Positions 1 through 64,000 of a DNA stretch of 64,000 nt are shown here, piece after piece. A program made the position numbers and the translations under genes. This DNA is from Piromyces finnis finn. Taxonomy: Eukaryota; Fungi; Neocallimastigomycota. Numbering within the stretch: position 1 is the first letter of the stretch; each line of letters opens with the position of its first letter. Below the pieces are notes generated by a model. That model made no database searches, had not been told where the DNA came from, and was given only the letters and a program-made list of their open reading frames with translations. Where the stretch lies: contig MCFH01000015.1 of the NCBI GenBank assembly GCA_002104945.1, positions 806,001 through 870,000 on the forward strand, in the 5' to 3' direction.

Positions 1-400
1 ACTCCTGATACATTTATCATGGTATCATACATAAATGAAATAATTTAAATTATTGTAAATTAGGTTAACGACAAGCTTTATTAAAAATTATATATTCTTA
101 AAAATTTATTATAAACTTTTTGACTTTGTATGAATCTTGTTTGGATTTGCATACTTGTATTCACACAAAGTATTAGTGTTGGTATTAATGTAACTTATCG
201 TAGTTGAATCTAATTGCTCTAGTTTATTCTTAATTATATATATGTCTATTAACACTAAACACTAAATTTTTAATATTTTATTTTCACTACCAGCGTTGTT
301 TAATATTATAATGCTTATTTAATAATTAATTTTTAAAATAATATAACAAATATGTTATTATTAATTAATGATGATGAATTATTAATTGAATAGTTTTTAT

Positions 401-426
401 AATATTAATTTAGCGCTCATCATGCC
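401..426 (-). promoter_or_regulatory. Rolling-circle origin, half 1: stem arm plus TAATATT heptamer up to the nick
   Basis: Minus strand reads GGCATGATGAGCGCTA-AAT-TAATATT|AT. TAATATTAT is the nonanucleotide of SsHADV-1-like genomoviruses. Confidence 0.75.
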
Positions 427-558
427 AGCTTTTGCACTTAGAAACGTGACTTTGGATTAACCTACGCTGATGCACGTGATGTCACAAAAGAAGAATTATA
501 CACGTGTTTACAACTATTAGTTATCGCCGACGCACATGTAGATAAATTAATGGTAGCT
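422..558 (+). pseudogene. rep: CRESS Rep N-terminus (HUH endonuclease motif I), frameshifted and truncated
   Basis: Restoring one T in the run at ~451-453 gives MPAFALRNVTFGLTYADARDVTKEELYTCLQLLVIADAHVDKLMVA. FGLTY matches RCR motif I, and the sequence breaks just before the expected motif II (HxH). Confidence 0.72.
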
Positions 559-1097
559 GATGGGGAATTTCCCACGGCTTTATCATTGGTTACTGTAGCA
601 GAAACCCCTTCAATACTCTGTGTCGGTAAGATTTTACGACCTTGTAAATAAGTACATAAATTATTGAACTTTAAATGACAAACACTATACCAAATAGTTT
701 TTGAGGCTGCACCAGCACCCATCCAAGAAAAACCAAATCTGTTTATATATTTGTTTTTAGTAGGGTTTGTTTTAAACAATTTGCGTAAAAATCGTTGTTC
801 GCGTGGTGTTCTACGTACTATCATACGTGTTGTAGTATGGGTTGTACCGGCAGCGTTTCCTTTAACTGATTCGAATTGTCTATTGCCAATCCTACGATTT
901 CTTCGTACAATCCTATCTCTTGCTCTACGTCCTAAATTTTGGGCCAATTGTCTTGCTTTATTACGCACCATCCTATTTCTCATTGCTCTTCGTAATACGT
1001 TACGTGCTACTACCGGTACTTTCCATAACGCTTGTCTTCCTATTTGTTGAATAGGATAATTTCTCGCTCTTCGTACAACTTGTTGTCGTTATGGCAT
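555..1097 (-). pseudogene. cap: CRESS capsid 5' half (Arg-rich arm), nonsense at codon 3, truncated
   Basis: MP*RQQVVRRARNYPIQQIGRQALWKVPVVARNVLRRAMRNRMVRNKAR... It matches 60716-61171, with 2 aa differences in the 143 codons from MRNRM to NSPSA. Confidence 0.85.
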
Positions 1098-1137
1098 TTT
1101 GATTGGTCAATCAAGTACATTCGTACATTATACGGAC

Positions 1138-1189
1138 ATTTATAGTAATTCCGCAAATTAAAGTTTAATTTAAAAAATTAATATAAATA
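1138..1189. promoter_or_regulatory. Divergent TATA boxes of the viral long intergenic region
   Basis: TATAAAT on minus (1144-1138) lies ~40 nt before the cap ATG (1097). TATAAATA on plus (1182-1189) points across the origin to the rep ATG (422) in the reconstructed circle. Confidence 0.45.
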
Positions 1190-1195
1190 GAGACT

Positions 1196-1220
1196 GGCAG
1201 GCAGGCATGGAGCGCTATAT
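1196..1220 (-). promoter_or_regulatory. Rolling-circle origin, half 2: post-nick AT, stem arm and GGCA x3 iteron-like repeats
   Basis: Minus strand starts ATA-TAGCGCTCCATGCC. Plus strand has GGCAGGCAGGCA at 1196-1207. Confidence 0.65.
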
Positions 1221-40300: not shown

Positions 40301-41036
40301 AATTGAGAATAACAATTACTGATACTAATTATATATTCTCATGATTAATTAATTAATAATTATAACTAATGATTTTTGATCCAAAGGCTTTTTTGGTTTG
40401 ATTATGATTGAGGTTATTAATCCAAATTATTTGAAAAATTATTAATTAATTTTTATAATTGATTAGGTTTGTAATCAAGAATATTTATTATCTAACCTTA
40501 TTTAATAATAATGGAGAATTTTTAAATTGAAATATTTATAGAAAGTTGGATGACTTGAATAATGACTTTAATTATATAAATTAATATTGATCATTTTAAT
40601 ATATATTTATTGGAACTAATTAATTCTTTAAATAGCTATATCTCAAGAACTAGTGGTCTAAATTAGCTGAAAATTTGTGAGAATATAGATATCAACTAGT
40701 ACTTCCTAATAAAATTAATTTGAAGTCTCTAGAAAAGGAAAATAGGACACGAGATTCAGAAGTTATCGCTAGTTTCGTATAGTGTATTTTCTTCTCAAGG
40801 GTTAATTTATTGAAAATTAAATTTTTGTGATCCTTAACCCTTTTCAATATTAAATTTTTTCAAGTGATCTTTTAATTATTTTTTAAAAGTGTTTTATAAT
40901 TTTTGAAATATAAATTTGATTTTTAAATTGTTTATTTGAATATTTAATTTATTTTTTAATCGTCTTCTATTCTTGACAGATAACAGAAGTAGTTGAGAAG
41001 TTGCAATATAACTACCAATCCGTTATCAAAAAACTA

Positions 41037-41657
41037 TGTCAAAAAGCGATTTTTTATTAAAGAAAAGTGTGGTAAGCACACTAGTTATATTAATTAACAA
41101 ATATAATACGCTTTCCTATTGAAGGCGTAAAGCTAATAATATTTATATAAAGAAAATTAAATAATATTTTTGTTTTAGCAATAATTTAATATCAGTATAT
41201 ATTAAGTTATTAAAAATATTAAAATTTTTAAAGTTTTGGGTTTTATAGAAGTTTATAAATTTTATTAACTTTAAGTTAAAAAATTACTAACGCTAAAGCT
41301 TTGTAATTTTTTGTGATTTTTTGTTCTTTTTATACTTGAACAATTTTAATAATTACATTTTTAATTTTAATTAATTATTGTTTAATTATAAAATATTTAA
41401 TTTTTATAAATTAATAATTAATATAATTATTGTAAATAGTTAATAAATTTAAAATAAATTTTTTAATAATAAATTTTTTAATAATTTAAAAAAAAAATTT
41501 AATAATTTCAAATATTAAAAATTTATACTTTGAAATTTTTTAATAAAAATTTAAAAAATAAATTTTTTCAAATTTTCAAATTTTCAAATTTTAAAAAATT
41601 TTTAATTTTTTCCATGTGTCCAAATTTTTTAAATTTTTATATATGTTGTTGTGACAA
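41037..41657 (-). repeat. LTR of the dual-RT family (621 bp)
   Basis: TGTCA...TGACA, near-identical to 35664-37320 (minus the insert) and to 52234-52826 in reverse. Confidence 0.88.
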
Positions 41658-42081
41658 TGATACGAAGAGGATATTATCTTAATTCTATATTTTACTATAG
41701 AAAGTGATAATATCTGTATCTAAAAATTTATAAATAAAAATAAGGAAAATAAAAATAGAATAAATGATTTTTATACTTGTTCATTTGCAAGTATTAGTTA
41801 ATTTTTAAAAATATAAAGTTTATTTAATTATAAAATTATCATTATTTAATAACTCTAGTATTATTAAATAAAAAAAATGTATGTTTTATATTCTAATTTT
41901 CAGGGATTATTAGTAACCCTTTTAAAAATAAGTTTTATTATAAAATCATTTTTGAATTTAATATTTAAAAGTATATATATCTAATTTTTCGCTCTGGATT
42001 ATTAGGAACATCTTTTAAAATAAAGTAATTCTATCACTATTTATACAAAATTATTATTTTAAAGTATAATTATAAACAAAT

Positions 42082-42808
42082 TGTAAAAGTTTTATAAATG
42101 TAAAACAGATTATAAAATTTTTTACAATAAAACAACAACACAAAATAAAGAAAAAACAAGAAAATAAATTATATTTAAAAAAATATCTCTTTTATTAATT
42201 TTATTTAGTTATTAACTAAATAATAGTCAATAACAATTACATCGTTTTAATCAAGAAATTTTACATGCATTTATATTTTTCGTAAATTATATTTTAATAT
42301 ACTATTCTATTTAATTATACATATATTCAATATAAAATAAACAAAACTAATTTAATACTAATTTAATTAAATAATAAAATAATAAAACTAAACTAAAACT
42401 AATTAAATACACTTTTGATTCAATTTGAGTAAACTGCAAATTGAATACAGTCCATGTATTACCTATATATTAATTAAATATTAATAATACTATTTATTAT
42501 ATATTTATAATTAAAAATGCTAATTTAAAACTACGCTAAAGTTATTAAACTAATTTTAATTAAATAAAAACTTTTTAAGATTTAATTTGAATATTTAAAA
42601 TATTTAAATTTAATTATCCATTAATTTAAATATTTATCCAAATTTCATTTCTAACTTTGATATTTTAAAATTAATATTTATTTAATTATTCCATAAAATT
42701 TATACAATAAATTTTATAAACAATTTTTTCATTAAAATATCAAAATTATTATTCAATAATTATTAATTAATTATTAAATAATTTAAAGATATACTTTATA
42801 TCTTTACA
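42082..42808 (-). repeat. 3' LTR (727 bp)
   Basis: TGTAAAAG...CTTTACA, matching 48236-48962. Confidence 0.95.
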
Positions 42809-42839
42809 ATCTCGCCCTTTAAGTCGAGCTCCTGCGAGA

Positions 42840-47651: not shown

Positions 47652-47869
47652 ATTTTCGTTTAAGTGGAGGTTAGATAAGAGTTGGTTGATTTCCTCCAAT
47701 ATGCTTAATATTTTACTTATTTAATTTTTTACAATATTTTAATTAAGATGTCGTCGTAACTCTATCCTATCAAACGGTGTTAGACGAGCTCTTAAAAATA
47801 TAGTAACAAAATTAAATACAGTAACCAAATAGTGTTGGAAGCTTGAATGATACTAAAATAATAATCTAA

Positions 47870-48149
47870 ACGCGGTAGATATTTCCTAAGACACGGTAGA
47901 TCGCCTTTAAAACACAGTAGATATTCCTTTAGACGCGGTAGATATTTCCTAAGACACGGTAGATCGCCTTTAAAACACAGTAGATATTCCTTTAGACGCG
48001 GTAGATATTTCCTAAGACACGGTAGATCGCCTTTAAAACACAGTAGATATTCTTTTAGACGAGGTAGATATTTCCTAAGACACGGTAGATCGCCTTTAAA
48101 ACACAGTAGATATTCTTTTAGACGAGGTAGATATTTCCTAAGACACGGT
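47870..48149. repeat. 63-bp tandem repeat x~4.4, each made of three 21-bp subunits, in the 5' UTR
   Basis: Units start at ~47870, 47933, 47996, 48059 and 48122. Subunits share the core AC(G/A)(C/G)(G/A)GTAGAT. Confidence 0.92.
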
Positions 48150-48224
48150 AAGTAAGAAAAAAAATATTAAATATGTTTTATTAAAAAAAAAAAAATTTTA
48201 TAACGTGTTTTATAAAAAAAAAAG

Positions 48225-48235
48225 GTAATTGTTAT
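48225..48235 (-). promoter_or_regulatory. Self-priming PBS (ATAACAATTAC)
   Basis: Abuts the 5' LTR, has no TGG, and is perfectly complementary to the LTR sequence at 48384-48394. Confidence 0.85.
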
Positions 48236-48962
48236 TGTAAAAGTTTTATAAATGTAAAACAGATTATAAAATTTTTTACAATAAAACAACAACACAAAAT
48301 AAAGAAAAAACAAGAAAATAAATTATATTTAAAAAAATATCTCTTTTATTAATTTTATTTAGTTATTAACTAAATAATAGTCAATAACAATTACATCGTT
48401 TTAATCAAGAAATTTTACATGCATTTATATTTTTCGTAAATTATATTTTAATATACTATTCTATTTAATTATACATATATTCAATATAAAATAAACAAAA
48501 CTAATTTAATACTAATTTAATTAAATAATAAAATAATAAAACTAAACTAAAACTAATTAAATACACTTTTGATTCAATTTGAGTAAACTGCAAATTGAAT
48601 ACAGTCCATGTATTACCTATATATTAATTAAATATTAATAATACTATTTATTATATATTTATAATTAAAAATGCTAATTTAAAACTACGCTAAAGTTATT
48701 AAACTAATTTTAATTAAATAAAAACTTTTTAAGATTTAATTTGAATATTTAAAATATTTAAATTTAATTATCCATTAATTTAAATATTTATCCAAATTTC
48801 ATTTCTAACTTTGATATTTTAAAATTAATATTTATTTAATTATTCCATAAAATTTATACAATAAATTTTATAAACAATTTTTTCATTAAAATATCAAAAT
48901 TATTATTCAATAATTATTAATTAATTATTAAATAATTTAAAGATATACTTTATATCTTTACA
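48236..48962 (-). repeat. 5' LTR (727 bp)
   Basis: Matches 42082-42808. Confidence 0.95.
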
Positions 48963-51003: not shown

Positions 51004-51283
51004 CTTTATATGGATCAATACAACTAGAATGAATAAAACAATTATTATATTATAATGAAATAACACAACAATAAAAATGATTTTTATATTTTATGTATTA
51101 TTGTATATATTCTTTTTATTTATCTTTGATCAATAATGTACTATTTATATGGATCAATACAACTAGAATGAATAAAACAATTATTATATTATAATGAAAT
51201 AACACAACAATAAAAATGATTTTTATATTTTATGTATTATTGTATATATTCTTTTTATTTATCTTTGATCAATAATGTACTAT
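51004..51283. repeat. 139-bp tandem duplication
   Basis: TGGATCAATACAACTAG... starts at 51011 and 51150. Confidence 0.85.
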
Positions 51284-52233: not shown

Positions 52234-52826
52234 TGTCACAATAACATATATAAAAATTTAAAAAATTTGGACACATGAAAAAAATTAAAAATTTTTTTAA
52301 AATTTGAAAATTTGAAAATTTGAAAAAATTTCAAATTATAAAATTTCTAATATTCGAAATTATTAAATTTTTTTTAATAATTATTAAAATTTTATTATAA
52401 AAAATTTTTATTTTTAAATTTATTAACTATTTACAATAATTATTAATTATTAATTTATAAAAATTAAATATTTTATAATTAGATAATAATTAATTAAAAT
52501 TAAAAAATGTAATAATTAAAATTGTTCATGTATAAAAAGAACAAAAATTGACAAAAATTACGAAGTTTTAGCATTAGTAATTTTTAACTTAAAGTTAATA
52601 AAATTTATAAACTCCTATAAAACCTAAAACTTTAAAAATTTTAATATTTTTAATAACTTAATATATGCTGATATTAAGTTATTGCTAAAATAAAAATATT
52701 ATTTAATTTTCTTTATATAAATATTATTAGCTTTACGCCTTCAATAGGAAAGCGTATTATATTTGTTAATTAATATAACTAGTGTGCTTACCACACTTTT
52801 CTTTAATAAAAAATCGCTTTTTGACA
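52234..52826 (+). repeat. 5' LTR (593 bp) of the dual-RT element
   Basis: TGTCACA...TTTGACA, lies 81 nt before the gag ATG, followed by a self-priming PBS. Three other copies are in the window. Confidence 0.88.
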
Positions 52827-52907: not shown

Positions 52908-55900
52908 ATGGGAAAATCTCCACTTACACCTATTAAAGTGGATACAAAAGAATTTTTTAACCGCCTACAAACTACCAAGAGAGAACGTTCCCCAGGAAAT
53001 ACTCCCGTAAGAAAATCAAAGATGCCTAATCATTCCGGACAAATTAATGCTTCTACGAGTAATCCTACTCAGAAGCCAACTACTAATGAGGATCTCAAGG
53101 CCCTCATTGAGTCTTTAACTGCTACCTTAACTGGGAATATCAATCAGTTAAAGGTTGATATTCAAGCTACCAGAAGGGAAAACGAAAGTCTCAATGATCG
53201 TTTGACTGTTTTGGAAAACTCTACTCAAGTTATTATGGGTAAGATGGCTACTTTAGAAGTCAACGATGCTAGGAAAGACAATCAACTCGCTGATATCAAA
53301 GCTCATATCAGCAAAGCTACTCAAAGAGTTGATGAGTTGTCTACTCCCGTTACTCCTTCTACTACTACCCCTCACGAACCTGACGGTGACGTCATCATGG
53401 GAGATGCTTCGCCTCCAAACGTCGCTGAAAAAATGCTTTCTTACTCAGGAGAAAGTATTCAACTACGCAGATTCATCCGTCGATGCGAACACCACTTCTT
53501 AAGACACATCAAGTTCTATGGAAACAATGAAGCTATGAAAGTAAACTTCATTGAAGATTGTCTTACTGGTGATGCTGCAGATTGGTACGTTGTTGAACAA
53601 GCAGACTTCCAGGAATCTCATCCGAATAGAAAAGTTCTTTACGAAGCTTTGAGTAAGAGATTCCTTAACCCGAAGGATATCAACATCACCAAAATCGACC
53701 TGATGAAGCTCAGACATAGTTGGGGAAAAGCTTCCGAATACTTAGGAAAATTCTCCCAATATGTCAAATTAATTGGATGTTCCGAAGACATTCAATTAAC
53801 CATCATGCTTTTCCAAGTTAGACCTACCGTGAACCACGCCTTTAGTAAGTTAACTTCTGATAGACAAACGTTAGAAGAACTGAAGAATCTTCTAATCAAA
53901 TATGATGCTTCCAAGGATACTTATTACGATGATACTTTGGAAAGACAAGCTAACTACAAGGACAAAGAGCCCTTAATAGCTAATTTATTAGGTATTCATG
54001 GCAGTCTTTATTCCAAAAACCCTAACAAGAATAACAATCGTAATAACAACCAAAGGAACAACAATAACAGCAATCGCCCGTCTAACCAAAAAGGAAAAGG
54101 CTCCAGTAACTTGGATAGCAAGTCTAGTACTAAAAATCCCAATAAAAGTACTAAACCTAATAATGGTACTTCATACTCCAGCTATCTCTGTGAAGTAGAA
54201 GAGCAAGATATCTTAGAGCTACCAAATCCTGATCCGGAGAAGTATCCCATCGTGAAGACTAGTGTAAAAACTTCTAAAGGATCTAGACAGGTTATCACTT
54301 CGTCTCTCTTAGATTCTGGCTCTACTACCAATGTAATCCATATGGATTTAGTGAAGAAACTAGGAATTAAGACCATACCAGCTGATACTGTTGTAAAGGT
54401 CATGGGAGGTAATGTCCTAATGCATTACATCACAGAAGAGTTCAACATTGTAATGAACTTATCTTCTTTAGGAAGAACTCGAGAAGAAGTTCGTCAATAC
54501 AAACTTCGATGCCACGTAGCTGATCAGCTTCCTTCTTCGATTCTCCTAGGTTCTAAGTTCATGAAAACCAACTTCTTCTGTATCTTTACACAACCTGACC
54601 ATTCCTTTACAGTTAAAATTGGTCCTGTTCCTTTCTCCAACCATAATGGATCTGAGATTAAATCTCCTAACTTTAGGAATGATTTGAAGAAATCTACACC
54701 TCTTCATGAATTACGCGAAGTCCTCCAAAAGAGACAGTTCGTCTTAGACGAACAATGGGACAAAGAACATTTGAACGATCGAGGAAGAATCGTGATCAAG
54801 AAACAATCAAGCAAGAAACCCAATAATAACCATGTCCACAACACAGAAACGATAACCCTATCCAACGAAGAAAAACTGAAAATCGAACAAAGGCTTCTTA
54901 AACAAAAACAAAACAATCAAAGTTTTATAATCTCAACTGACCATAAAGAAGGACTCGACGAATACATTATCAAGGAAATACAAAACCTCCCTCAAGAATT
55001 ACAAGAATTCAAGCAAGTTTTCGGACCACCACCAAAGGGCAAGATATTTAATAGGAAAAACGAAAATTTAAATTCATACTTACCTTATGATAAGGAAAAA
55101 GTTAAGAGGCTACCCATGATGCCTCACATCAAATTAGACAAAAACCAAGAAGACGCTCTTGAACAAGAATTTCATGAACTTGAACAGAACGGAAAAATCG
55201 AGAGAACTCGATCCAGTTCGGCTTGCAACGTCTTTAATGCACCTAAGAAAGATGGTACATTCAGAACTGTGTTTAATTACGTTATGGTTAATAATTGCCT
55301 ACACCATAACAACTACCCAATACCTAAAATAATCGAACTTGTACACAGAGCTGCCCAGTATAAGTTCCATATTTTACTAGATTTAAGAAATGCCTATAAC
55401 CAAATCTATCTCGAGCCCAAATATCGTTTCCTTACAAGCTTTAGATTTAAAAACCAAACCTATCAATGGAAAGTTCTTCCCTTTGGACTCTCCACTGCCC
55501 CATCCATTTTCCAATCCATTCTCAACCTCTTATTAAAAATATACTTGAATAAAGGTATTGATATCTACCTAGATGATATACATATTTATGCCCAAGATAA
55601 GCAAGAATGCCTCAGACTTTGTGCTTACACTTTAAAGAAGTTCAAAGAAAATAATTTCTTTTGTAAACTTGAAAAATGCTTATTTTTCCCAGAAGAATTC
55701 GAATATTTAGGGTACAAAATTGGATATGAAAAAATACGTCCTATTTCTAATAAAACTTTAGACATTAAAGAATGCAAAACACAAAAGGAATATCAGCAAC
55801 TATATGGCTTTCTTAATTATTTCAAAGACTACGTAAATAACTTTACCGAAAGAACAAAATATATCTCTATGGGACTATCAAATAAAACCACTACTTGGAC

Positions 55901-57923
55901 TAAAGAAATGAATGACGAACTAAATTATTTTAAGAAATTAATTCCTAACCTTCCAAATTTAGCACCGTTTAAACCTAACCACGATATCTTTATCCTAACC
56001 GACGCATCGGAAATCGGAATTGGCGCCGCAATTTTTCAAGCGGGGGCCCCCAATGTACATATTCAAAATTACATTTTAAGTAACGTATACAAGAATAATA
56101 TTAATCGTGAAATCATCGAAAACTTATTTGGTCATAAAAATTGGACATTAAACGGACATTCTGAAGTAAATGGACGTGAAAATAAGAAAATCGATAAAGC
56201 CAAGAATCGTGAAGATATCAATCCACCAATTAAATTGAATGAAGCAATGAATACATTTGAAATAAAAAACAATAGTTTATCCGAATTAAAAAAGTATTTA
56301 AAACCCATAGGCTTTTTCTCCAGAAAATTGAATTCTACAGAAAGAAAATATTCAACATTCGACAGAGAATTATTAGCTCTCTCGGACACCTTACAACACT
56401 ACCGGTTACTTCTCCAACAAGGACAAAAAATATACTGTGCGACGGACCATAAGAATTTGGTAATCTACATAAATTCCGGATCCAAAGTCGAAACTAATCG
56501 TAAGTTAAGATTATTTGAAAATATTTGCAATTACAATATAATACCTTATTATATCGAAGGAAAAGACAACAAGATTGCAGATCTACTCTCAAGATTTATT
56601 AAAATGGAAAACGAAACCGAAAATACTAGCAACAGAAGAAACCCACAGCAGGTCAACAATATTGAAGAAACAAATTCTTTGGATTTCTTAGTAAATGCCA
56701 TTGAACTCAAGGACTTAGAATCTACCAACAAAGAAGAAGATAACGAGGAACCAGACTTAAAAGTCTTTAAGACTACCATAAGTTCGCTAATGGAAAATAA
56801 TAAACAAAAGGAACTAAAAAATTATCTTATCAATTGGTACAAGAACCAGGATATGTTATTCAAATCATTGAAGGAACAAATAGTAAACCTACTAGAAGAA
56901 AACACTTTCTTCGAAAAACAATATAAAAAACAAGTTAATCTCAGATGTCAAGACCTAAAAGATGTATTGGATAAAAGAGAACATTTTAGTTCAGAAATAA
57001 AAAAGGTGAAAGATGAATTACAACTTCTACAAACTGGCAACACCCAAGGAGAAACTAAAAGAAAATTTGATAGACTTAATCAAAAAATAAACGATTTAAG
57101 GTATGACCTCAATCCAAAGGCTGAAAGAATAGAACTCACTAAGAAAGTAAACCATTCGGAAAAACAGATAACTGCCCAATGGAAAGAGATAGAAAACCTC
57201 AAGAAAATAATAGAAAAAATGGATAAAAGGATAACTGCCCTAATCATTGACAACGAAGAAGACTCAAATCTGGATAAATCAACTTCCATTCCAACAGAAA
57301 CAGTCTTCATAGTCGATGATCAGAATCCTGAACTAGTAGAATCTATCAACGGTATACCTTTGGAATATGAAGATTTATATGAAGCCTTCAATGAAGAACG
57401 AGCCGATGAACTTCCTGAACATCGTGTATATGATTGTTCTATTGATTTGAAACCTAATGCTTCATTATTTTATGGGCCAATTTATCCAACTACTCCTACT
57501 GAACGTCAATTTATTAAGGAGTATATTGAAGAAAACTTGAATAAAGGATTCATTAGAAAATCCCGATCTCCTGCTGGACATCCAGTTCTACTCCAAGATA
57601 AGAAGGATGGTAGTCTCAGATTTTGCGTTGACTATCGCAAGCTCAACGACCAAACTATCAAGAATGCCTATCCGCTACCTTTAATCCTATCAGTCTTTGA
57701 ATCAATGAAAGGTGCTAACTATTTCACTAAGTTAGACCTCAAGTCAGCTTATAATTTAATTAGGATTAAAGAAGGTGACGAATACAAGACTGCATTTAGG
57801 ACGGCATTTGGTCACTTTGAGTACTTAGTCATGCCTTTTGGACTAACTAATGCTCCTGCAGTTTTCCAAGCTTTCATTAATGATATCTTTAGTGATCAAA
57901 TTAATAAGTACGTTCAAGTGTAA
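52908..57923 (+). CDS. gag-pol: Polyprotein part 1: Gag, protease, RT1, RNase H1, coiled-coil domain, N-terminal half of RT2
   Basis: Gag (YSGESIQLRRFIRRCEHHF), LLDSGS, RT1 (LLDLRNAYNQI, LPFGLSTAP, YLDD at 55566), RH1 (TDAS, RELLA, TDH, ADLLSR), then a second RT ([37 protein letters not shown]). Confidence 0.92.
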   Translation: MGKSPLTPIKVDTKEFFNRLQTTKRERSPGNTPVRKSKMPNHSGQINASTSNPTQKPTTNEDLKALIESLTATLTGNINQLKVDIQATRRENESLNDRLTVLENSTQVIMGKMATLEVNDARKDNQLADIKAHISKATQRVDELSTPVTPSTTTPHEPDGDVIMGDASPPNVAEKMLSYSGESIQLRRFIRRCEHHFLRHIKFYGNNEAMKVNFIEDCLTGDAADWYVVEQADFQESHPNRKVLYEALSKRFLNPKDINITKIDLMKLRHSWGKASEYLGKFSQYVKLIGCSEDIQLTIMLFQVRPTVNHAFSKLTSDRQTLEELKNLLIKYDASKDTYYDDTLERQANYKDKEPLIANLLGIHGSLYSKNPNKNNNRNNNQRNNNNSNRPSNQKGKGSSNLDSKSSTKNPNKSTKPNNGTSYSSYLCEVEEQDILELPNPDPEKYPIVKTSVKTSKGSRQVITSSLLDSGSTTNVIHMDLVKKLGIKTIPADTVVKVMGGNVLMHYITEEFNIVMNLSSLGRTREEVRQYKLRCHVADQLPSSILLGSKFMKTNFFCIFTQPDHSFTVKIGPVPFSNHNGSEIKSPNFRNDLKKSTPLHELREVLQKRQFVLDEQWDKEHLNDRGRIVIKKQSSKKPNNNHVHNTETITLSNEEKLKIEQRLLKQKQNNQSFIISTDHKEGLDEYIIKEIQNLPQELQEFKQVFGPPPKGKIFNRKNENLNSYLPYDKEKVKRLPMMPHIKLDKNQEDALEQEFHELEQNGKIERTRSSSACNVFNAPKKDGTFRTVFNYVMVNNCLHHNNYPIPKIIELVHRAAQYKFHILLDLRNAYNQIYLEPKYRFLTSFRFKNQTYQWKVLPFGLSTAPSIFQSILNLLLKIYLNKGIDIYLDDIHIYAQDKQECLRLCAYTLKKFKENNFFCKLEKCLFFPEEFEYLGYKIGYEKIRPISNKTLDIKECKTQKEYQQLYGFLNYFKDYVNNFTERTKYISMGLSNKTTTWTKEMNDELNYFKKLIPNLPNLAPFKPNHDIFILTDASEIGIGAAIFQAGAPNVHIQNYILSNVYKNNINREIIENLFGHKNWTLNGHSEVNGRENKKIDKAKNREDINPPIKLNEAMNTFEIKNNSLSELKKYLKPIGFFSRKLNSTERKYSTFDRELLALSDTLQHYRLLLQQGQKIYCATDHKNLVIYINSGSKVETNRKLRLFENICNYNIIPYYIEGKDNKIADLLSRFIKMENETENTSNRRNPQQVNNIEETNSLDFLVNAIELKDLESTNKEEDNEEPDLKVFKTTISSLMENNKQKELKNYLINWYKNQDMLFKSLKEQIVNLLEENTFFEKQYKKQVNLRCQDLKDVLDKREHFSSEIKKVKDELQLLQTGNTQGETKRKFDRLNQKINDLRYDLNPKAERIELTKKVNHSEKQITAQWKEIENLKKIIEKMDKRITALIIDNEEDSNLDKSTSIPTETVFIVDDQNPELVESINGIPLEYEDLYEAFNEERADELPEHRVYDCSIDLKPNASLFYGPIYPTTPTERQFIKEYIEENLNKGFIRKSRSPAGHPVLLQDKKDGSLRFCVDYRKLNDQTIKNAYPLPLILSVFESMKGANYFTKLDLKSAYNLIRIKEGDEYKTAFRTAFGHFEYLVMPFGLTNAPAVFQAFINDIFSDQINKYVQV

Positions 57924-60317
57924 TTGGATGATATCATTATCTACTCCAAGACCCTTGAAGAACATGTTCAACATGTTAGAAATGTTCTTCAATTAATCAT
58001 TGAAAACAACTTAGTTGCGAAACTCAAAAAATGTGAGTTTCACAAAGCTGAAATCGAATTTTTGGGTCACGTAATCAGTAAGGAGGGAATCAAAACTGAT
58101 CCTCACAAAATTGAAGCAGTTAAGAACTGGCCTATCCCCACTACTGTGAAAGAAGTTCAGTCTTTCTTAGGGTTATGCAATTACTACCGTCGCTTTATCT
58201 CTAACTTTTCTAAAATTGCAAAACCATTATACAACTTAACTAAGAAAGGCGTCACTTTCATATGGACAGACGAGTGTAATAGAGCATTTAATCAACTTAA
58301 AGAATTTCTTACTTCAGCTCCAGTTTTACTTTGTCCTGATCACGATAAACCATTCATAGTTGAATGTGACGCAAGTGACTTTGCTATCGGGGGAGTACTT
58401 TCACAAAAAGGTGATGATGGAGACCTGCATCCAGTTTATTACTTTTCTAAAACCCTTCATGATGCAGAACTTAATTACTCTATCACCGAAAAGGAACTCT
58501 TAGCAATTCGTCAAGCTTTTATCGAATGGCGTCACTTACTTCAAGGTGCAAAATATCCTATTACCGTTTATTCAGACCATCGAAACTTGCTTTTTGCTAC
58601 CAAACCGCAACTTCTATCCCAAAGACAAGCTCGTTGGCAAGAATACTTTGCTACTTTTGATTTCAAGATTATCTATCGACCAGAAAAGAAAAATGGTAAA
58701 GCTGATGCTCTCTCTCGTAGATCCGACCATATGCTCACAGTTGGTAAGGATATAAGTGAATCATCCTTACTTAAACCAACTCAATTAGAAGGATTCAACG
58801 AAGATGAATGCTACTTCTCTATGGAAACTAGCTTCATTGACGACATTAAGCAGTGCTACCTTCAAGATGAAACCGCTTGTCAGATTCTTAAGGATCTTGA
58901 AGTTCCAAATAGTGATCATCCTTGGATTCTTCAAGATGGCCTTTTAATAAGAACCAAACATCCGGAGCAAGTATATGTTCCAAGTCAACTAAGACTCTTA
59001 GTTATTAAGCTCAACCATGATGCACCCACTGCCGGTCACTTGGGAGTCGATAAGACTTATGACATTCTTAAACGTAATTTCTATTGGGTTAATATGCGTC
59101 AAGATGTCGAGTCTTATATTCGAAGCTGTAGTGTATGCAAGGCAATGAAAACCGATCACCATGCTCCTTATGGTAATATGATCCGTGTCCCTCTTCCGGA
59201 ACTTCCATGGCAACATCTACAAATGGACTTTATCACGGACTTACCATCAAGACCTTGTAACTCTACCTTACCATTCGACTCTACCAATCCGAACCACTAT
59301 CAAGGTACCATAATGGTTACTACTTGCTACTTAACTAAGATGATACACTTAGTTGGGTTCAAACATTTATCCACTGCTAAGGAAACTGCTACTGCTTTTC
59401 TTAACCATATTTTCAAACTGCACGGATTCCCCTTATCTATTGTTACAGACCGTGGTACTCAGTTCGAAAGTCGTCTTTGGTTCCACTTGATGGAATTCTT
59501 TAATATCGATCACCACTCTGCTACTACTGGCCATCACCGCACTGTTGGACAAGTAGAACGTAACAACGACTACGTCGAAACTTATCTTCGTTGCTACTTA
59601 GCTCAATTTGATGATCTCAGTTGGATGGATCATTTGTACTTAGCTGAATTTTGCTACAACAATTCCATCCATGCTTCCACCAAGCAACCACCATTTCTCT
59701 CCGTCTATAATTATCAAGTTCACGCAAACCCACAAATTGCAGACCTTGTTTCTTCTTTAGGACTTCATCCCCTCATCGATAGCTTCTCCCATAACTTAGC
59801 TGACCTTAAGCATACTCTCGAAGTCAGTCGTACCCGTTATCTCGATGAAAAGGATAAGCACCTTTATCACAACTTTAAGCGCTTCAAGGTCCACGATCTT
59901 GTTTGGCTTCGCAAACCCGCTAATTATCATCCTCCATTAGCGTTCAAGCTCCAAACCCGCAAGTATGGTCCATACAAGGTCACTGGTGTCGATGAATCTA
60001 AGCTCAACTACCGCCTTGATTTATCTACCTCACCTTTCCCTCGTGTCTACCCCGTATTCCACATCAGTGAACTCGAACCATATCATCCCACTCCTCACCA
60101 TCTATTGCTCAACCATCCCAACTCCAATGAAATCACCAAGATCCTTAGTTCTCGTAAATCGGGTCATTTTTACGAGTACTTAGTCACTTTTACTGACTTA
60201 TCTCAACGTTGGATCAATGCTGACACCATTGATAAGGATGACTACTACAGCACCCTTTTAGCTGATTACCAACGTCGCGCTTACCAACAATTCACCAATT
60301 CCGTCCCAGATTCTTAA
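57924..60317 (+). CDS. pol: Polyprotein part 2 (same frame, after TAA): rest of RT2, RNase H2, integrase, chromodomain
   Basis: LDD, CDASD/KELLA/SDH/ADALSR, HDAPTAGH..CSVC, MDF/TDRG/QVERNN, GPYKV, EITKILSSR..YEYLVTF..RW. Confidence 0.9.
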   Translation: MDDIIIYSKTLEEHVQHVRNVLQLIIENNLVAKLKKCEFHKAEIEFLGHVISKEGIKTDPHKIEAVKNWPIPTTVKEVQSFLGLCNYYRRFISNFSKIAKPLYNLTKKGVTFIWTDECNRAFNQLKEFLTSAPVLLCPDHDKPFIVECDASDFAIGGVLSQKGDDGDLHPVYYFSKTLHDAELNYSITEKELLAIRQAFIEWRHLLQGAKYPITVYSDHRNLLFATKPQLLSQRQARWQEYFATFDFKIIYRPEKKNGKADALSRRSDHMLTVGKDISESSLLKPTQLEGFNEDECYFSMETSFIDDIKQCYLQDETACQILKDLEVPNSDHPWILQDGLLIRTKHPEQVYVPSQLRLLVIKLNHDAPTAGHLGVDKTYDILKRNFYWVNMRQDVESYIRSCSVCKAMKTDHHAPYGNMIRVPLPELPWQHLQMDFITDLPSRPCNSTLPFDSTNPNHYQGTIMVTTCYLTKMIHLVGFKHLSTAKETATAFLNHIFKLHGFPLSIVTDRGTQFESRLWFHLMEFFNIDHHSATTGHHRTVGQVERNNDYVETYLRCYLAQFDDLSWMDHLYLAEFCYNNSIHASTKQPPFLSVYNYQVHANPQIADLVSSLGLHPLIDSFSHNLADLKHTLEVSRTRYLDEKDKHLYHNFKRFKVHDLVWLRKPANYHPPLAFKLQTRKYGPYKVTGVDESKLNYRLDLSTSPFPRVYPVFHISELEPYHPTPHHLLLNHPNSNEITKILSSRKSGHFYEYLVTFTDLSQRWINADTIDKDDYYSTLLADYQRRAYQQFTNSVPDS

Positions 60318-60742
60318 TCTGGACCCCACTTATTAGTATCCCACCTACTAGTGTCTACCACCCTTACTCCTTCACTACCCACCTATCGCCACTACCCCAC
60401 CTACTACCCACAACTCCGCTACCCACTAGTCGCCACCACTACAACTACCAACCACTATTCCGCTACCCAACCACCCTCTTTCGCCTTTGCCCTCAACCCT
60501 CAAATTCCGCAACCTTTTCCGCATCCCAAAATCCGTATCCCCTCGAGTCATATCATTTCCCTAACCTTCACGTGTAGTCTCCATTTCTGAAGAATCCACG
60601 TGATACCCTCACAACTTTTCTTTGAACACTTTTACACCTCACTTTTTCAACACTTAGAAAAATTTTGAGAATTTTCAAAAAATGGAAATTCTCAATTTTT
60701 GAAAAAAAATCTAAGGTAGCACGTAACGTATTACGAAGAGCA

Positions 60743-61867
60743 ATGAGAAATAGAATGGTGCATAATAAAGCAAGACAATTGGCTCAAAATTTAGGACGTA
60801 GAGCAAGAGATAGGATTGTACGAAGAAATCGTAGGATTGGCAATAGACAATTCGAATCAGTTAAAGGAAATGCTGCTGGTACAACCCATACTACAACACG
60901 TATGATAGTACGTAGAACACCACGCGAACAACGATTTTTACGCAAATTGTTTAAAACAAACCCTACTAAAAACAAATATATAAACAGATTTGGTTTTTCT
61001 TGGATGGGTGCTGGTGCAGCCTCAAAAACTATTTGGTATAGTGTTTGTCATTTAAAGTTCAATAATTTATGTAATTATTTACAAGGTCGTAAAATCTTAC
61101 CGACACAGAGTATAGAAGGAGTTTCTGCTACAGTAACCAATGATAAAGCCGTGGGAAATTCCCCATCAGCTGGTATTTACGTTGGTAAATGTACATTCCA
61201 TTACGAATTGTATAACCCAACTAATTATTTAATGACCGTATACATTTACGATTTAATTTGTAAATGTGATACACCACATCAAATAGCATATTCTGATGCT
61301 AATAATGATGGTAATAGTGCCCCTGAAGCTTGTATGCAAAAGGGTTCAAAATCCATGACCGATGGAGGTTCTGCCCCAACATGGCAAGTTGCAGACCCTA
61401 CACTCGAAATGGGTACATATTGGAATACTGTTGGTATGAAACCAACGGACTATCATTTATTTAATACGATTTGGAAAGTCAAAGGAATGAAAAAAATCAT
61501 TTTACCACCTGGATCATCACACCATCACGTGGTTATATACAACCCAAAAAAGAAGATAACCAATGCTAGTTTATTATACCCTAGAGAAACTAGACATACT
61601 AATAATAAAATGGGTATTGGTGGTATTACACAAGCAACTTTATTTGGTTTTGAAGGTCAAGTTGCAACTGAAGACAATCAACGTAGTGATGGTACAATTG
61701 TAGGTACATTACCTGGTAAATTATTAGTTAAATGTATTAAAAAGGTAAATATATGGGATCTTCCATGTAACTATCAATCAGTAACATCTGAAGATGATTT
61801 AGTAGCAACATGGACTAAACCAACTATATTCTCTGATTTAGTAGAAGTCAATGCAAGCTCTACATAA
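60743..61867 (+). CDS. cap: CRESS virus capsid protein (Arg-rich arm plus probable single jelly-roll), 374 aa from first in-frame ATG
   Basis: Very Arg-rich N-terminus followed by beta-strand-type segments (FHYELYNPTNYLMTVYIYDLIC, IWKVKGMKKIILPPGSSHHHVVIY). Near-identical to the copy next to a Rep and origin at 401-1220, and converges on a Rep remnant. Confidence 0.85.
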   Translation: MRNRMVHNKARQLAQNLGRRARDRIVRRNRRIGNRQFESVKGNAAGTTHTTTRMIVRRTPREQRFLRKLFKTNPTKNKYINRFGFSWMGAGAASKTIWYSVCHLKFNNLCNYLQGRKILPTQSIEGVSATVTNDKAVGNSPSAGIYVGKCTFHYELYNPTNYLMTVYIYDLICKCDTPHQIAYSDANNDGNSAPEACMQKGSKSMTDGGSAPTWQVADPTLEMGTYWNTVGMKPTDYHLFNTIWKVKGMKKIILPPGSSHHHVVIYNPKKKITNASLLYPRETRHTNNKMGIGGITQATLFGFEGQVATEDNQRSDGTIVGTLPGKLLVKCIKKVNIWDLPCNYQSVTSEDDLVATWTKPTIFSDLVEVNASST

Positions 61868-62137
61868 GAACACGTGACATACAACTAAGTTAACGTGTTT
61901 GATCCCTGTGAGCCGCAGGCTCTAGACCCTGGCCGTTGACTATCACATGTTTATATCTCATGGTGATCATGTGATGAGTCACACCCTCCCACTTATCCAT
62001 AGCCAAGTGGTTCTGAGAGGATTGTTTCCTACTCTGGACGGACGGCTCTGGGGGAGTAGGAGGAACAGATTTTTTTATTATTTTTATTTAACACAAAATG
62101 TATACAACACAAATATAATGTAATGTAATGTAAATAT
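61868..62137. other. GC-rich, hairpin-rich viral short intergenic region
   Basis: Stems AACACGT/ACGTGTT, GAGCC-GCA-GGCTC, ATCACATG/CATGTGAT, CCACTT/AAGTGG and TCCTACTC/GAGTAGGA. Confidence 0.6.
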
Positions 62138-62150
62138 AATAAACTTTATT
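62138..62150. terminator. Back-to-back polyadenylation signals AATAAA-C-TTTATT
   Basis: AATAAA on plus (62138-43) for cap. AATAAA on minus (62150-45) overlaps the rep stop. Confidence 0.6.
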
Positions 62151-62290
62151 TAATATAATTTATTTTGTAAAACAATACAAGTACAATTTTTTTTTAAAAA
62201 GTTTAAGTGTTCAATATTTAAATTCTTATATAAATCTTCATTGGATAACCAAATCATTGGTTTTCCCCAATGAACCGTTCTTTTAAAATT
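62150..62290 (-). pseudogene. rep: CRESS Rep C-terminus (SF3 helicase motif C region)
   Basis: FKRTVHWGKPMIWLSNEDLYKNLNIEHLNFLKKNCTCIVLQNKLY* follows the genomovirus/geminivirus pattern K..I.WGKP.IWL.N...WL..NC.F..L..PL(F/Y)*. Confidence 0.8.
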
Positions 62291-62747
62291 AAATTGCCTG
62301 TTCGTTTTAGTAAAAACTAACGGGGGCCTTTTCTTCAATGGTAACTAGATAATATGTAGCTATGGCTATATACTATTTCGGGTATTGGCCTACTTATCTT
62401 AGGAAATCTAAAATACTTAAACCAATGTATATGTAGTATTGACGTTAAAGAGCCTACTTTAAGGAATTTTCACGTAAGTAAAACTCGTTTGTGATTTATG
62501 CGTTTTATATAATAATTTTATTTAATATGTTTTATTATAAGTTTATTTATAAGATCAAAGTTATTTAAAAGTTTGTTGTTTTATTAATTCTTTATCCTCT
62601 GTTGCTATATTGTCGAGGAAGACTATCTTTTTCTAGTGATTAATAATAACTAACAAATACTTTTAAAAGTTATAAAGTTTTATAAATAAATGAATTTTTT
62701 CGAATTAATACGTTTGAGTTTAAAATTTTCGTTACAAATTTTATATT

Positions 62748-62851
62748 ACGAATTTAAATTACGAATTTTAACTACGAATTAAAACTACGAATTTTAACTA
62801 CGAATTAAAACTACGAATTTTAATCACGAATTTTAACCACGAATTTTAAAT
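62748..62851. repeat. 13-bp tandem repeat x8 (ACGAATTTTAACT consensus)
   Basis: Units start at 62748, 62761, 62774, 62787, 62800, 62813, 62826 and 62839. Confidence 0.9.
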
Positions 62852-63013
62852 TAGAAAAAACTAAAGTTTTAAAATAATACATTTAGATGATATTTATACA
62901 TGATTATTAAATTTAGCTATAATATTATTAATAAACTATTACTAATAGAATTTTTAAAGTTATATTAAATATAAATAATTTTAACTAATTAGATTCATTT
63001 TTTGTGTTTAAAG

Positions 63014-64000
63014 TTAGTCAAATGTTTCTTGGTTCTTTTTCATTGGTTCATTTGTTAAATCGATTTCTATTTGAAAGTTCGAAAGTTTTCTTTTCTTAAG
63101 TTCATTACTAATTACGGCTTCGGAAGCGGGGAAGATTTCCTTTAATTCGTTATCAATTATCAAAGCATTGATTCTTTTACTAATACTTTCGATTTTATTT
63201 CTAAGTTCTTCTGTTTCCTTCCATTGGGCAGTTAATTGTTTTTCCGTTTTATTAACCTTTCTAGTAAGTTCGATGCGTTCGGCCTTTGGGTTTAGATCAT
63301 ATCTAAGGTCGTTGATTTTTTGATTTAATTTGTTGAATTTTCTTTTAACTTCTACTTGAGTGTTTCCTGTTTGAAGAAGTTGAATTTCGTCTTTTACCTT
63401 TTTAATTTCTTGATTAAACTGTTCCTTTCTGTCCAAGACTTCTTTTAAGTCTTCGCATCTTAAATTAATCTGCTTTTTATATTGTTTTTCATAATAAGTG
63501 TTTTCTTCTAATAGGTTAATAATTTGTTCTTTCAAGCTTTTGAATAGTTTATCCTGATTTCGATACCATTTGTATAGGTAATCCTTTAATTCTTCTTGTT
63601 TATTGCTTTCGATTAATGAATTGATTGTAACTTTAAAGACTTTGAAGTCGGTGTCTTCTTTCTTTTCATTATTGTTTGATGATTCCTTATCTTTTAATTC
63701 AATTGTGTTGATTATAAAATCTAGTGAGTTCATTTCCTCTATGTTGTTTATCTGTTGTGGATTAGCTATAGTATTATTGTTTACTTCATTACTTTGTTCC
63801 ATTTTGATAAATCTTGATAATAGGTCCGCTATTTTGTTATCTTTTCCTTCTATGTAGCAAGGTATAACATTAAAATTGCAAATATTCTCGAATAGTCGTA
63901 GCTTTCTATTTGTTTCGACTTTGGAACCAGAGTTGATATAGATTACTAGGTTCTTGTGGTCCGTGGCGCAATAGATTTTTTGTCCCTGTTGAAGTAATAA
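63014..64000 (-). CDS. 3' end of a second RT1-type ORF: RNase H C-terminus plus coiled-coil domain, then stop (runs off window)
   Basis: Open from 64000: LLLQQGQKIYCATDHKNL...ADLLSRFIKME, 3 aa differences from RH1 in 66 codons. The coiled coil is homologous to 56600-57255, and the ORF ends ...QETFD* with no RT2 or integrase. Confidence 0.88.
   Translation of the reverse strand, partial: LLLQQGQKIYCATDHKNLVIYINSGSKVETNRKLRLFENICNFNVIPCYIEGKDNKIADLLSRFIKMEQSNEVNNNTIANPQQINNIEEMNSLDFIINTIELKDKESSNNNEKKEDTDFKVFKVTINSLIESNKQEELKDYLYKWYRNQDKLFKSLKEQIINLLEENTYYEKQYKKQINLRCEDLKEVLDRKEQFNQEIKKVKDEIQLLQTGNTQVEVKRKFNKLNQKINDLRYDLNPKAERIELTRKVNKTEKQLTAQWKETEELRNKIESISKRINALIIDNELKEIFPASEAVISNELKKRKLSNFQIEIDLTNEPMKKNQETFD

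What the first reader, a model, noticed from the sequence alone, without database searches (positions are those of the whole stretch)
60716..61867. ssDNA-virus capsid ORF in the env position of the dual-RT retroelement
Seen: 400 nt after the integrase stop, on the same strand, is an uninterrupted 374-codon CRESS capsid frame that lost its native start but keeps an in-frame ATG and a polyA signal. Known: Ty3/Gypsy elements have repeatedly captured envelope or movement genes at this position; I know of no capture of a jelly-roll capsid. Inference: possibly a retroelement-CRESS chimera. Against: the antisense Rep end comes along too and no 3' LTR is visible, so this may be a DNA-level insertion that truncated the element.
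Basis: partly seen in the sequence, partly recalled or inferred. Interest (0 to 1): 0.8.

Follow-up and report, generated by a model that had tools for sequence, protein, structure and literature searches.

The report
Endogenous ssDNA virus inside a fungal retrotransposon
The capsid reading frame is real, but it is part of an almost whole small circular-DNA virus genome that became integrated, as DNA, inside an LTR retrotransposon of the gut fungus Piromyces finnis. It is one of at least four such integrations in that genome and shows no sign of being a gene the retrotransposon uses or spreads.

Summary
Observation confirmed. Window 60716-61867 (+) is an unbroken capsid frame of a CRESS-DNA virus. 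It is 63-66% identical to capsids on 2.6-2.9-kb metagenome contigs, has a predicted jelly-roll fold, lacks the first 29 codons, and lies 398 nt after the integrase stop.

Interpretation partly supported. The position is right: a PPT-like motif and the best-matching LTR (98.8%) lie 8.1 kb past the capsid's stop codon (6 kb past the window end), so the viral DNA sits between integrase and PPT/3' LTR. It is not a captured capsid gene, though. The insert is a near-complete ambisense viral genome (capsid, short intergenic region, antisense Rep). Rep is decayed and split by a 6.65-kb nested retroelement block.

The integrase-capsid junction is single-copy, because the only other instance is an uncollapsed assembly duplicate. 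Three other capsid loci in the same Piromyces finnis assembly have different ends and no such retroelement upstream. Low dN/dS between copies (0.10) fits independent recent integrations of live virus rather than selection within the element.

The main residual value is host assignment: this ruminant-gut CRESS lineage probably infects anaerobic fungi. I did not fetch the DNA of the viral relatives.

The parts
52234..52826 (+). 5' LTR (TGTCACA...TGACA, 593 nt) of the host LTR retroelement
   Evidence: Four copies of this LTR family were aligned. This copy is 98.8% identical (7 substitutions in 591) to the LTR at L001 18987-19609 and 95-96% identical to the other copies. Fourteen informative sites group these two LTRs, against 2 and 1 for the alternative groupings.
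52908..60317 (+). gag-PR-RT-RNaseH-coiled coil-RT-RNaseH-integrase-SH3 reading frame ('dual RT'). It is broken once by an in-frame stop, with no frameshift.
   Evidence: Pfam finds RVT_1 twice, RT_RNaseH, Integrase_H2C2, rve and SH3_Tf2-1. The second RT-RH-IN part is 58-72% identical to single-RT elements L005 and L006, while the first part is only about 27% identical to them.
60318..60649 (.). C-rich spacer of unknown origin (48.5% GC) between the integrase stop and the viral insert
   Evidence: It has no match anywhere in the held sequence. Relatives L005 and L006 have the PPT-like motif within about 10 nt of the integrase stop, so this stretch is probably not native 3' UTR.
60650..60694 (.). 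Left arm of a perfect 45-nt inverted repeat that brackets the insert. The right arm is L001 18853-18897, directly abutting the Rep start.
   Evidence: The arms are 100% identical in inverted orientation. The sequence occurs nowhere else in the window or in L003-L006.
60695..60715 (.). 21-nt A/T-rich filler between the repeat arm and the capsid fragment
   Evidence: Read from the sequence. Homology to the other capsid copies starts exactly at 60716.
60716..61867 (+). CRESS-DNA virus capsid gene, 5'-truncated (residues 30-412 of the full-length form), otherwise unbroken
   Evidence: It is 98.35% identical in nucleotides to the L003 copy with no gaps.
61868..62149 (.). Viral short intergenic region between the converging capsid and Rep ends, with AATAAA at 62138-62143
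   Evidence: It is colinear with L004 at 96.6% identity across capsid, intergenic region and Rep end. Rfam finds nothing.
62150..64000 (-). Rep gene, broken, running off the window to window-equivalent 69856. It carries one nested 6.65-kb block, one internal deletion of about 40 codons, at least 4 frame changes and 1 stop.
   Evidence: tblastn with the intact 297-aa Rep of L004 gave counts and outer bounds only. The L004 Rep hits Pfam Gemini_AL1_M and has Rep relatives of 340-345 aa on 2.2-3.0-kb contigs.
62377..64000 (-). Nested block inside Rep, continuing to window-equivalent 69030. It holds an LTR-less gag-PR-RT-RNaseH-coiled-coil retroelement fragment plus an AT-rich tail, and is flanked by a 95-nt direct duplication.
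   Evidence: A hairpin with a 15-bp stem lies in the duplicated stretch.
399..1218 (-). Second, internally deleted viral copy of about 0.82 kb. Capsid residues 1-188 (one stop) converge on a short Rep N-terminal piece, and both ends lie in the origin loop.
   Evidence: It is 98.2% identical to 60716-61171. The ends were read from the sequence.

Best explanation
A circular ssDNA (CRESS) virus of about 2.8 kb, belonging to a lineage common in ruminant-gut metagenomes and probably infecting anaerobic fungi, was integrated as DNA into the Piromyces finnis genome several times. At this locus a nearly unit-length linear copy landed in the very short interval between the integrase stop and the polypurine tract of a Ty3/Gypsy-type LTR element. 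That copy runs from capsid codon 30 through the short intergenic region and the antisense Rep to the Rep start. It came in together with about 0.5 kb of unexplained flanking DNA bounded by a 45-nt inverted repeat. Later a 6.65-kb retroelement-derived block entered Rep, and Rep decayed further. The capsid frame is still open because the integration is recent, not because the retroelement uses it. Shown: the identity of capsid and Rep, the layout, the single-copy junction, the other loci, and the substitution pattern. Inferred: the order of events, the DNA-level mechanism, and the fungal host of the free virus.
For: The source is P. finnis assembly GCA_002104945.1. Capsid and Rep relatives sit on contigs of the same 2.2-3.0-kb size class. 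The layout is capsid, intergenic region, then antisense Rep, and is colinear with locus L004, where Rep is an intact 297-aa ORF. The PPT-like motif CCTTAGGA(G/C)GGGC occurs in held sequence only in three places. Two are directly after the integrase stop of relatives L005 and L006, and the third is directly before the LTR at L001 18987. That LTR is the closest relative of the 5' LTR at 98.8%. There are four capsid loci with different end points: residues 30-412 here, 1-412 in L003, 40-412 in L004 and 1-188 at window 399-1218. None of the other three has this retroelement upstream. L002 differs from L001 by 2 substitutions and 117 indels over 13.4 kb, flanks included, so it is an assembly duplicate. 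This copy versus L003 shows 14 synonymous and 5 non-synonymous differences, dN/dS 0.10, Fisher p 1.5e-6. The adjacent Rep parts are only 75-88% identical between loci. That pattern fits separate integrations of diverged, recombining viruses. L003 keeps the native origin hairpin with TAATATTAT in its loop.
Against: The LTR pair has no matching target-site duplication (AACTA versus ATGTA), so the two LTRs may come from two elements. The 398 nt before the capsid, the 45-nt inverted repeat and the 95-nt duplication around the nested block are unexplained. A read-through transcript of an older integrated copy could in principle also carry an antisense Rep, so an RNA-mediated origin of the composite is not strictly excluded. 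The rest of the fungal genome could not be searched at DNA level, so 'single copy' rests on protein clusters and on the held loci. Low dN/dS is also what host-level selection would give.
Confidence: 0.78

Rival explanations
1. True chimera. The LTR element acquired the capsid as an extra gene in the env position and uses or spreads it as part of its own transcript.
For: It lies on the same strand, 398 nt after the integrase stop and upstream of the PPT and 3' LTR. The frame is unbroken over 383 codons with an in-frame ATG. dN/dS is low against other copies.
Against: The junction is single-copy. The whole viral genome is present, with a decayed antisense Rep and a 6.65-kb nested block between the capsid and the PPT. 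There is no target-site duplication. Relatives of the element have no gene at this position. The synonymous-rich differences are to capsid copies that lie outside any such element. The pol frame itself carries a stop.
Confidence: 0.04
2. Host domestication. The fungus keeps capsid copies under selection, for example as an antiviral factor, independently of the retroelement.
For: dN/dS is 0.10 and 0.09 between copies. L003 holds an intact full-length 412-aa capsid, and gene models were called on all four loci. Capsid parts are far more alike between loci than Rep parts.
Against: Three of the four copies are truncated and two carry a stop. The copy at L004 gives dN/dS 0.58, which is not significant. 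Different end points and flanks point to separate integrations, and in that case the synonymous excess was laid down in the free virus. There are no expression data.
Confidence: 0.1
3. The insert does not lie within one element. It lies between the 5' part of one element and the PPT and 3' LTR of a second, closely related element, joined by recombination or deletion.
For: There is no matching target-site duplication. The LTRs differ by a 27-nt indel and 7 substitutions. The region is a dense mosaic of retroelement fragments.
Against: The two LTRs are each other's closest relatives among four copies. The PPT-like motif is of exactly the family of the integrase that precedes the insert.
Confidence: 0.2
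4. Assembly artefact or contamination. Viral reads were joined to fungal contigs by error.
For: The assembly shows uncollapsed duplicates and many indel errors. The capsid's GC (35%) is higher than the window mean (24%).
Against: There are four loci on four large contigs (0.45-1.08 Mb), each with different fungal junctions. A fungal retroelement fragment is nested inside Rep. The same junction was assembled twice independently, in L001 and L002. The copies carry truncations and decay.
Confidence: 0.03

Closest known systems
Endogenous CRESS-DNA virus elements in eukaryotic genomes (Liu et al. 2011, PMC3198968; Kinsella et al. 2020, PMC7493932, for Entamoeba and Giardia)
   Same: Integrated Rep and capsid fragments occur in several copies, often decayed. 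They can be used to link metagenomic circular viruses to a host.
   Different: Capsid-derived elements are rare in such surveys: 3 capsid against 302 Rep sequences in Liu et al.. Here one locus keeps an intact full-length capsid and this one keeps 383 unbroken codons. I found no report for Neocallimastigomycota in the library searched.
env acquisition by Ty3/Gypsy-type elements, such as insect errantiviruses and plant env-like ORFs (from my own knowledge)
   Same: A foreign viral structural gene lies on the sense strand between integrase and the PPT/3' LTR.
   Different: Those env genes are shared by all copies of a family and encode membrane glycoproteins. Here the protein is a jelly-roll capsid, the junction is single-copy, and it comes with a whole antisense Rep and a nested insertion. 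Relatives of the element have no gene at this position.
Geminivirus-related DNA in Nicotiana, and defective subgenomic DNAs of geminiviruses (from my own knowledge)
   Same: Rep-encoding circular ssDNA has been integrated. The 0.82-kb copy at window 399-1218 keeps both gene starts, has a large internal deletion, and ends in the origin loop, like a defective circle linearised near the nick site.
   Different: The host is a fungus, the virus lineage is different, and there are no tandem arrays.
Geminivirus-like transposon of Tuber melanosporum with 37-bp terminal inverted repeats and no target-site duplication (Liu et al. 2011)
   Same: Viral Rep-bearing DNA in a fungal genome is bounded by a perfect inverted repeat of similar length (45 nt here) and has no target-site duplication.
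   Different: The Tuber element has 42 near-identical copies. The 45-nt repeat here is found at this locus only, and the other three loci have other kinds of ends.
Genomoviridae (fungal and environmental CRESS viruses)
   Same: Rep matches the geminivirus-type central domain. More distant Rep relatives are named Genomoviridae sp. at 41% identity. The origin loop holds TAATATTAT.
   Different: The capsid is 412 aa and the relatives' contigs are 2.6-2.9 kb, both larger than I recall for genomoviruses. No Pfam capsid family matches. No phylogeny was made.

Membership tests
CRESS-DNA virus (Cressdnaviricota) genome | Capsid homologous to known CRESS capsids, with a basic N-terminal arm | tested here: met
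   (104 homologues, some named capsid protein). The arginine-rich N-terminal third is seen in the translation.
CRESS-DNA virus (Cressdnaviricota) genome | Single jelly-roll fold of the capsid | tested here: met
   Model pLDDT 71. The PDB matches are all jelly-roll capsids at E about 1e-5 but with low TM (0.2-0.47). BFVD gives CRESS capsids at E 1.5e-24 with TM up to 0.62.
CRESS-DNA virus (Cressdnaviricota) genome | Rep with HUH endonuclease and SF3 helicase parts, next to the capsid | tested here: met
   Rep pieces converge on the capsid. The intact Rep at L004 scores 24.8 bits on Gemini_AL1_M (cut-off 24) and gives weak Gemini_AL1 and AAA hits. UniRef names it a CRESS-DNA virus Rep endonuclease.
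CRESS-DNA virus (Cressdnaviricota) genome | Origin hairpin with a nonanucleotide in the loop | tested here: inconclusive
   It is present at sister locus L003 (8-bp stem, TAATATTAT in the loop, z -3.6) and split between the two ends of the copy at window 399-1218. It is absent from the locus of the finding, whose viral DNA stops at the Rep start.
Genomoviridae | Rep phylogeny within the family, with the family's genome size and capsid type | not tested
   There are only distant named hits (41% identity to a Genomoviridae sp. Rep). No tree was made, and the DNA of viral relatives was not fetched.
env-bearing Ty3/Gypsy element (errantivirus-like) | Extra sense-strand ORF between integrase and PPT/3' LTR | tested here: met
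   This is positional only.
env-bearing Ty3/Gypsy element (errantivirus-like) | The extra gene is shared by the transposed copies of the family | tested here: not met
   The junction was found once. Relatives L005 and L006 lack any gene there. No close sister copy was retrievable.
env-bearing Ty3/Gypsy element (errantivirus-like) | The extra gene encodes a membrane fusion glycoprotein | tested here: not met
   The fold is a jelly-roll capsid. No signal-peptide or transmembrane prediction was run.
env-bearing Ty3/Gypsy element (errantivirus-like) | Expression of the extra gene from a spliced subgenomic transcript | not testable with these tools
   No transcript data were available.
Ty3/Gypsy LTR retrotransposon (the host element) | gag-PR-RT-RNaseH-IN order, TG...CA LTRs and a PPT | tested here: met
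   Pfam, LTR ends, PPT-like motif.
Ty3/Gypsy LTR retrotransposon (the host element) | Matching target-site duplication around the LTR pair | tested here: not met
   AACTA before the 5' LTR, ATGTA after the downstream LTR.

The most novel reading that the evidence does not exclude
The LTR element carrying the viral insert is, or recently was, a working composite in which the capsid frame is expressed from the element's own transcript. That would make it a retroelement that picked up a jelly-roll capsid gene of an ssDNA virus. It might have arisen through read-through transcription of an older integrated copy rather than by DNA insertion.
Probability: 0.04. Interest if true: 0.85.

Novelty: new member of a known kind. 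Interest (0 to 1): 0.4.

Why it matters
For the scan, this shows that a viral ORF sitting in the env position of an LTR element is not evidence of capture unless the junction recurs. For biology, the value lies elsewhere. Four recent integrations sit in one anaerobic gut fungus, with capsid copies 96.6-98.4% identical to one another, and one has an intact capsid and its native origin hairpin. Together they tie a group of about 2.8-kb circular viruses seen in ruminant-gut metagenomes to Neocallimastigomycota as the likely host. At least one member of that group is named after cattle blood. This is the same logic that assigned other gut CRESS viruses to Entamoeba and Giardia (PMC7493932). I found no such assignment for anaerobic fungi in the library searched. 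The 0.82-kb copy whose two ends lie in the origin loop is a small clue that integration can start from Rep-nicked or defective molecules.

Tried and rejected
- **Capsid family searches.** Pfam and PDB sequence searches with the capsid gave nothing. Identity came from the word search and the fold search instead.
- **L002 as a second copy.** I first took L002 for a second genomic copy of the junction. I rejected that: it matches 13.4 kb including the flank upstream of the 5' LTR, with 2 substitutions and 117 indels, so it is an uncollapsed assembly duplicate.
- **Sister copies of the element.** The fungal genome is not in any DNA-searchable collection here. Genome contigs holds only bacteria and archaea, so no junction pattern search was run.
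- **Target-site duplication.** The test failed. An AACTA next to the inverted LTR at 41036 was considered and set aside as a probable chance match.
- **The 45-nt repeat arm.** A 31-nt, 90% match to the LTR region of L005 is low-complexity A/T sequence and was not relied on.
- **Rfam.** Nothing found on 60000-63100.
- As a result I could not define the viral intergenic regions from free viruses, or build a capsid/Rep phylogeny with free-virus genomes.

Full report
**1. What is there**

The window is very AT-rich (24% GC overall, with stretches of 14-20%) and full of retroelement remains. Look-up of the gene product places it in Piromyces finnis, an anaerobic gut fungus, assembly GCA_002104945.1, contig MCFH01000015.1.

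An open frame runs 60665-61867 on the + strand. Homology to viral capsids and to three other genomic copies begins exactly at 60716. From there to the stop are 383 codons without any break, equal to residues 30-412 of the full-length 412-aa paralogue P0105. The integrase ORF ends at 60317, 398 nt upstream on the same strand.

**2. It is a capsid of a small circular ssDNA virus**

- Pfam and PDB sequence searches were blank.
- The word search returned 104 homologues. The best non-self ones are 63-66% identical over 96% of the ORF, 414-425 aa long, and sit on contigs of 2.6-2.9 kb.
- A few are named capsid protein: a Cressdnaviricota sp., a 'cattle blood-associated gemycircularvirus', and a stray in a rumen Methanobrevibacter bin.
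- A model built on 28 sequences (pLDDT 71, pTM 0.62) matches only jelly-roll capsids in the PDB, including a bat circovirus and a geminivirus. Those matches have modest TM-scores.
- In BFVD it matches CRESS capsids with E down to 1.5e-24.

**3. The capsid does not come alone**

Downstream lie a 282-nt intergenic region and, on the minus strand, the C-terminal end of a Rep gene. L001 extends the window by 6.9 kb, and I followed the locus there.

- The rest of Rep lies at L001 18028-18853 on the minus strand.
- Between the two Rep parts sits a 6.65-kb block, from window 62377 to L001 18027. It holds an LTR-less gag-PR-RT-RNaseH-coiled-coil retroelement fragment on the minus strand plus an AT-rich tail.
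- That block is flanked by a 95-nt direct duplication, which contains a hairpin with a 15-bp stem.
- Measured against the intact 297-aa Rep ORF of sister locus L004, Rep here is broken by that block, by one internal deletion of about 40 codons, by at least four frame changes and by one stop.
- The frame-change count is soft, because this assembly has many indel errors.
- The L004 Rep reaches the Pfam threshold for the geminivirus-type Rep central domain. Its relatives are 55-66% identical, 340-345 aa long, and lie on 2.2-3.0-kb contigs.

The insert is thus a nearly unit-length ambisense genome running from capsid codon 30 round to the Rep start.

**4. Relation to the retroelement**

- Directly after the Rep start come the right arm of a perfect 45-nt inverted repeat, 74 further nt, a PPT-like motif, and then an LTR at L001 18987-19609 in the same orientation as the 5' LTR at 52234-52826. 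The left arm of the repeat is at 60650-60694.
- These two LTRs are each other's closest relatives: 98.8% identical, against 95-97% to two other copies, with 14 shared informative sites against 2 and 1.
- The PPT-like motif occurs in all held sequence only here and directly after the integrase stop of two single-RT relatives, L005 and L006, where it is followed by TGT.
- So about 9.7 kb now separates an integrase stop and a PPT that in relatives are some 10 nt apart.
- Against a simple one-element picture, the flanks of the LTR pair do not match (AACTA versus ATGTA).
- Also unexplained are the 398 nt before the capsid and the 118 nt after Rep. They match nothing else and are joined only by the 45-nt inverted repeat.

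**5. Is the junction repeated?**

The capsid's protein cluster has four members in this one genome.

- L002 carries the identical junction. However, it matches L001 over 13.4 kb, including 1.2 kb upstream of the 5' LTR, with 2 substitutions and 117 indels. It is an uncollapsed duplicate of the same place.
- L003 (MCFH01000011.1) has an intact 412-aa capsid. It is preceded by the native 142-nt intergenic region with an 8-bp-stem hairpin holding TAATATTAT in the loop, and by the Rep N-terminus.
- L004 (MCFH01000048.1) has capsid residues 40-412 with one stop, plus an intact Rep. The whole insert is flanked by a perfect 42-nt direct repeat.
- Window 399-1218 holds a 0.82-kb internally deleted copy with capsid residues 1-188 and one stop. 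Its two ends fall in the origin loop.
- None of these three has the integrase, the spacer or the 45-nt repeat next to it.
- A protein search with the RT-RNaseH-integrase ORF found no relative above 58% identity, so close sister elements could not be inspected.
- The family-level relatives have a single RT and no gene between integrase and LTR.

It is met as far as these tools reach.

**6. Selection**

| Comparison | Synonymous | Non-synonymous | dN/dS | Fisher p |
|---|---|---|---|---|
| This copy vs L003 | 14 | 5 | 0.10 | 1.5e-6 |
| This copy vs the 0.82-kb copy | 6 | 2 | 0.09 | 0.002 |
| This copy vs L004 | 7 | 15 | 0.58 | not significant |

- The loci differ in their end points and flanks.
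- Their Rep parts are only 75-88% identical, while their capsid parts are 96.6-98.4% identical.
- The simplest reading is several recent integrations from a population of recombining viruses. The synonymous excess was then laid down in the free virus.
- With so few substitutions since integration, an unbroken frame is expected by descent and needs no selection in the host.
- Host-level selection on the capsid is not excluded, and it is my second rival.

**7. The 'dual RT'**

- The first half of the element (gag-PR-RT-RNaseH-coiled coil) has two other copies that lack integrase and end in the same AT-rich tail: the nested block, and L004 9-609.
- The second half (RT-RNaseH-integrase) is 58-72% identical to ordinary single-RT elements. 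Their gag-PR is only 27% identical to the gag-PR here.
- The element therefore looks like an in-frame join of two lineages. It carries one in-frame stop.
- This bears on the finding only in showing that the locus is a mosaic.

**8. Known or new**

- Integrated CRESS sequences are well known in fungi, plants, animals and protists, mostly Rep and rarely capsid: 302 against 3 in PMC3198968.
- They have been used to assign hosts (PMC7493932, PMC9615429).
- I found no report for Neocallimastigomycota or P. finnis.
- I rate it a new member of a known kind. The retroelement-capture reading is improbable, at about 0.04.

**9. Limits and steps left out**

- I did not fetch the DNA of the metagenomic viral contigs by look-up or pattern. 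Their hosts are unknown, one relative is named after cattle blood, and Pfam likens Rep to that of geminiviruses.
- Consequently the viral intergenic regions were defined only from the fungal loci, and no tree was made.
- Alignments across frameshifts were reduced to counts and outer bounds.

Noticed in passing
window 399-1218 (capsid on the - strand): A copy of about 0.82 kb of the same virus with a large internal deletion (capsid residues 1-188 meeting a short Rep N-terminal piece). Its two ends carry the left arm plus loop and the right arm of the origin hairpin, as if a defective circle had been linearised at or near the Rep nick site before integration.
   Followed up: partly
L003 9625-12385 (MCFH01000011.1): An intact full-length 412-aa capsid gene with its native 142-nt intergenic region and origin hairpin (TAATATTAT in the loop), between two Rep fragments. 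A 0.57-kb insertion lies just after the capsid stop. This is the best-preserved copy in the genome and a candidate for host use.
   Followed up: partly
L004 9471-11925 (MCFH01000048.1): A viral insert with an intact 297-aa Rep ORF, flanked by a perfect 42-nt direct repeat, with a run of 12 A at the left junction. This integration signature differs from those of the other loci.
   Followed up: partly
window 60650-60694 and L001 18853-18897: A perfect 45-nt inverted repeat brackets the whole insert and is found nowhere else in the held sequence. It may mark a palindromic target or a fold-back rearrangement. Unexplained.
   Followed up: partly
window 62282-62376 and L001 18028-18122: A 95-nt direct duplication (96.8%) flanks the 6.65-kb nested block, far longer than an LTR-element target duplication. 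It contains a hairpin with a 15-bp stem (z -8.1).
   Followed up: partly
window 52908-60317; L001 12011-17880; L004 9-609; L005; L006: The 'dual-RT' frame looks like an in-frame join of an integrase-less gag-PR-RT-RNaseH-coiled-coil lineage with the RT-RNaseH-integrase of an ordinary single-RT Ty3/Gypsy lineage. The integrase-less lineage has at least two other copies.
   Followed up: partly
window 42080-48955 (- strand): Another LTR element with a 1619-aa uninterrupted ORF (42840-47699) and LTR stretches that are 100% identical at a spacing of 6154 nt. It looks young.
   Followed up: no
window 35662-36237 and 41036-41656 (- strand): Two more copies of the same LTR family enclose 4.8 kb of 14-15% GC DNA with no long ORF. 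A further partial copy at 10375-10826 abuts a 92%-identical gag fragment.
   Followed up: no
L002 (MCFH01000152.1) versus L001: The 23-kb contig is an uncollapsed duplicate of this locus, with 2 substitutions and 117 indels in 13.4 kb. Frameshifts seen in this assembly may be sequencing errors.
   Followed up: yes
window 62727-62856; 47795-48172; 51005-51282: Tandem repeats with 13-nt units, 21-nt units and a 139-nt doublet, in the AT-rich DNA next to retroelement ends.
   Followed up: no
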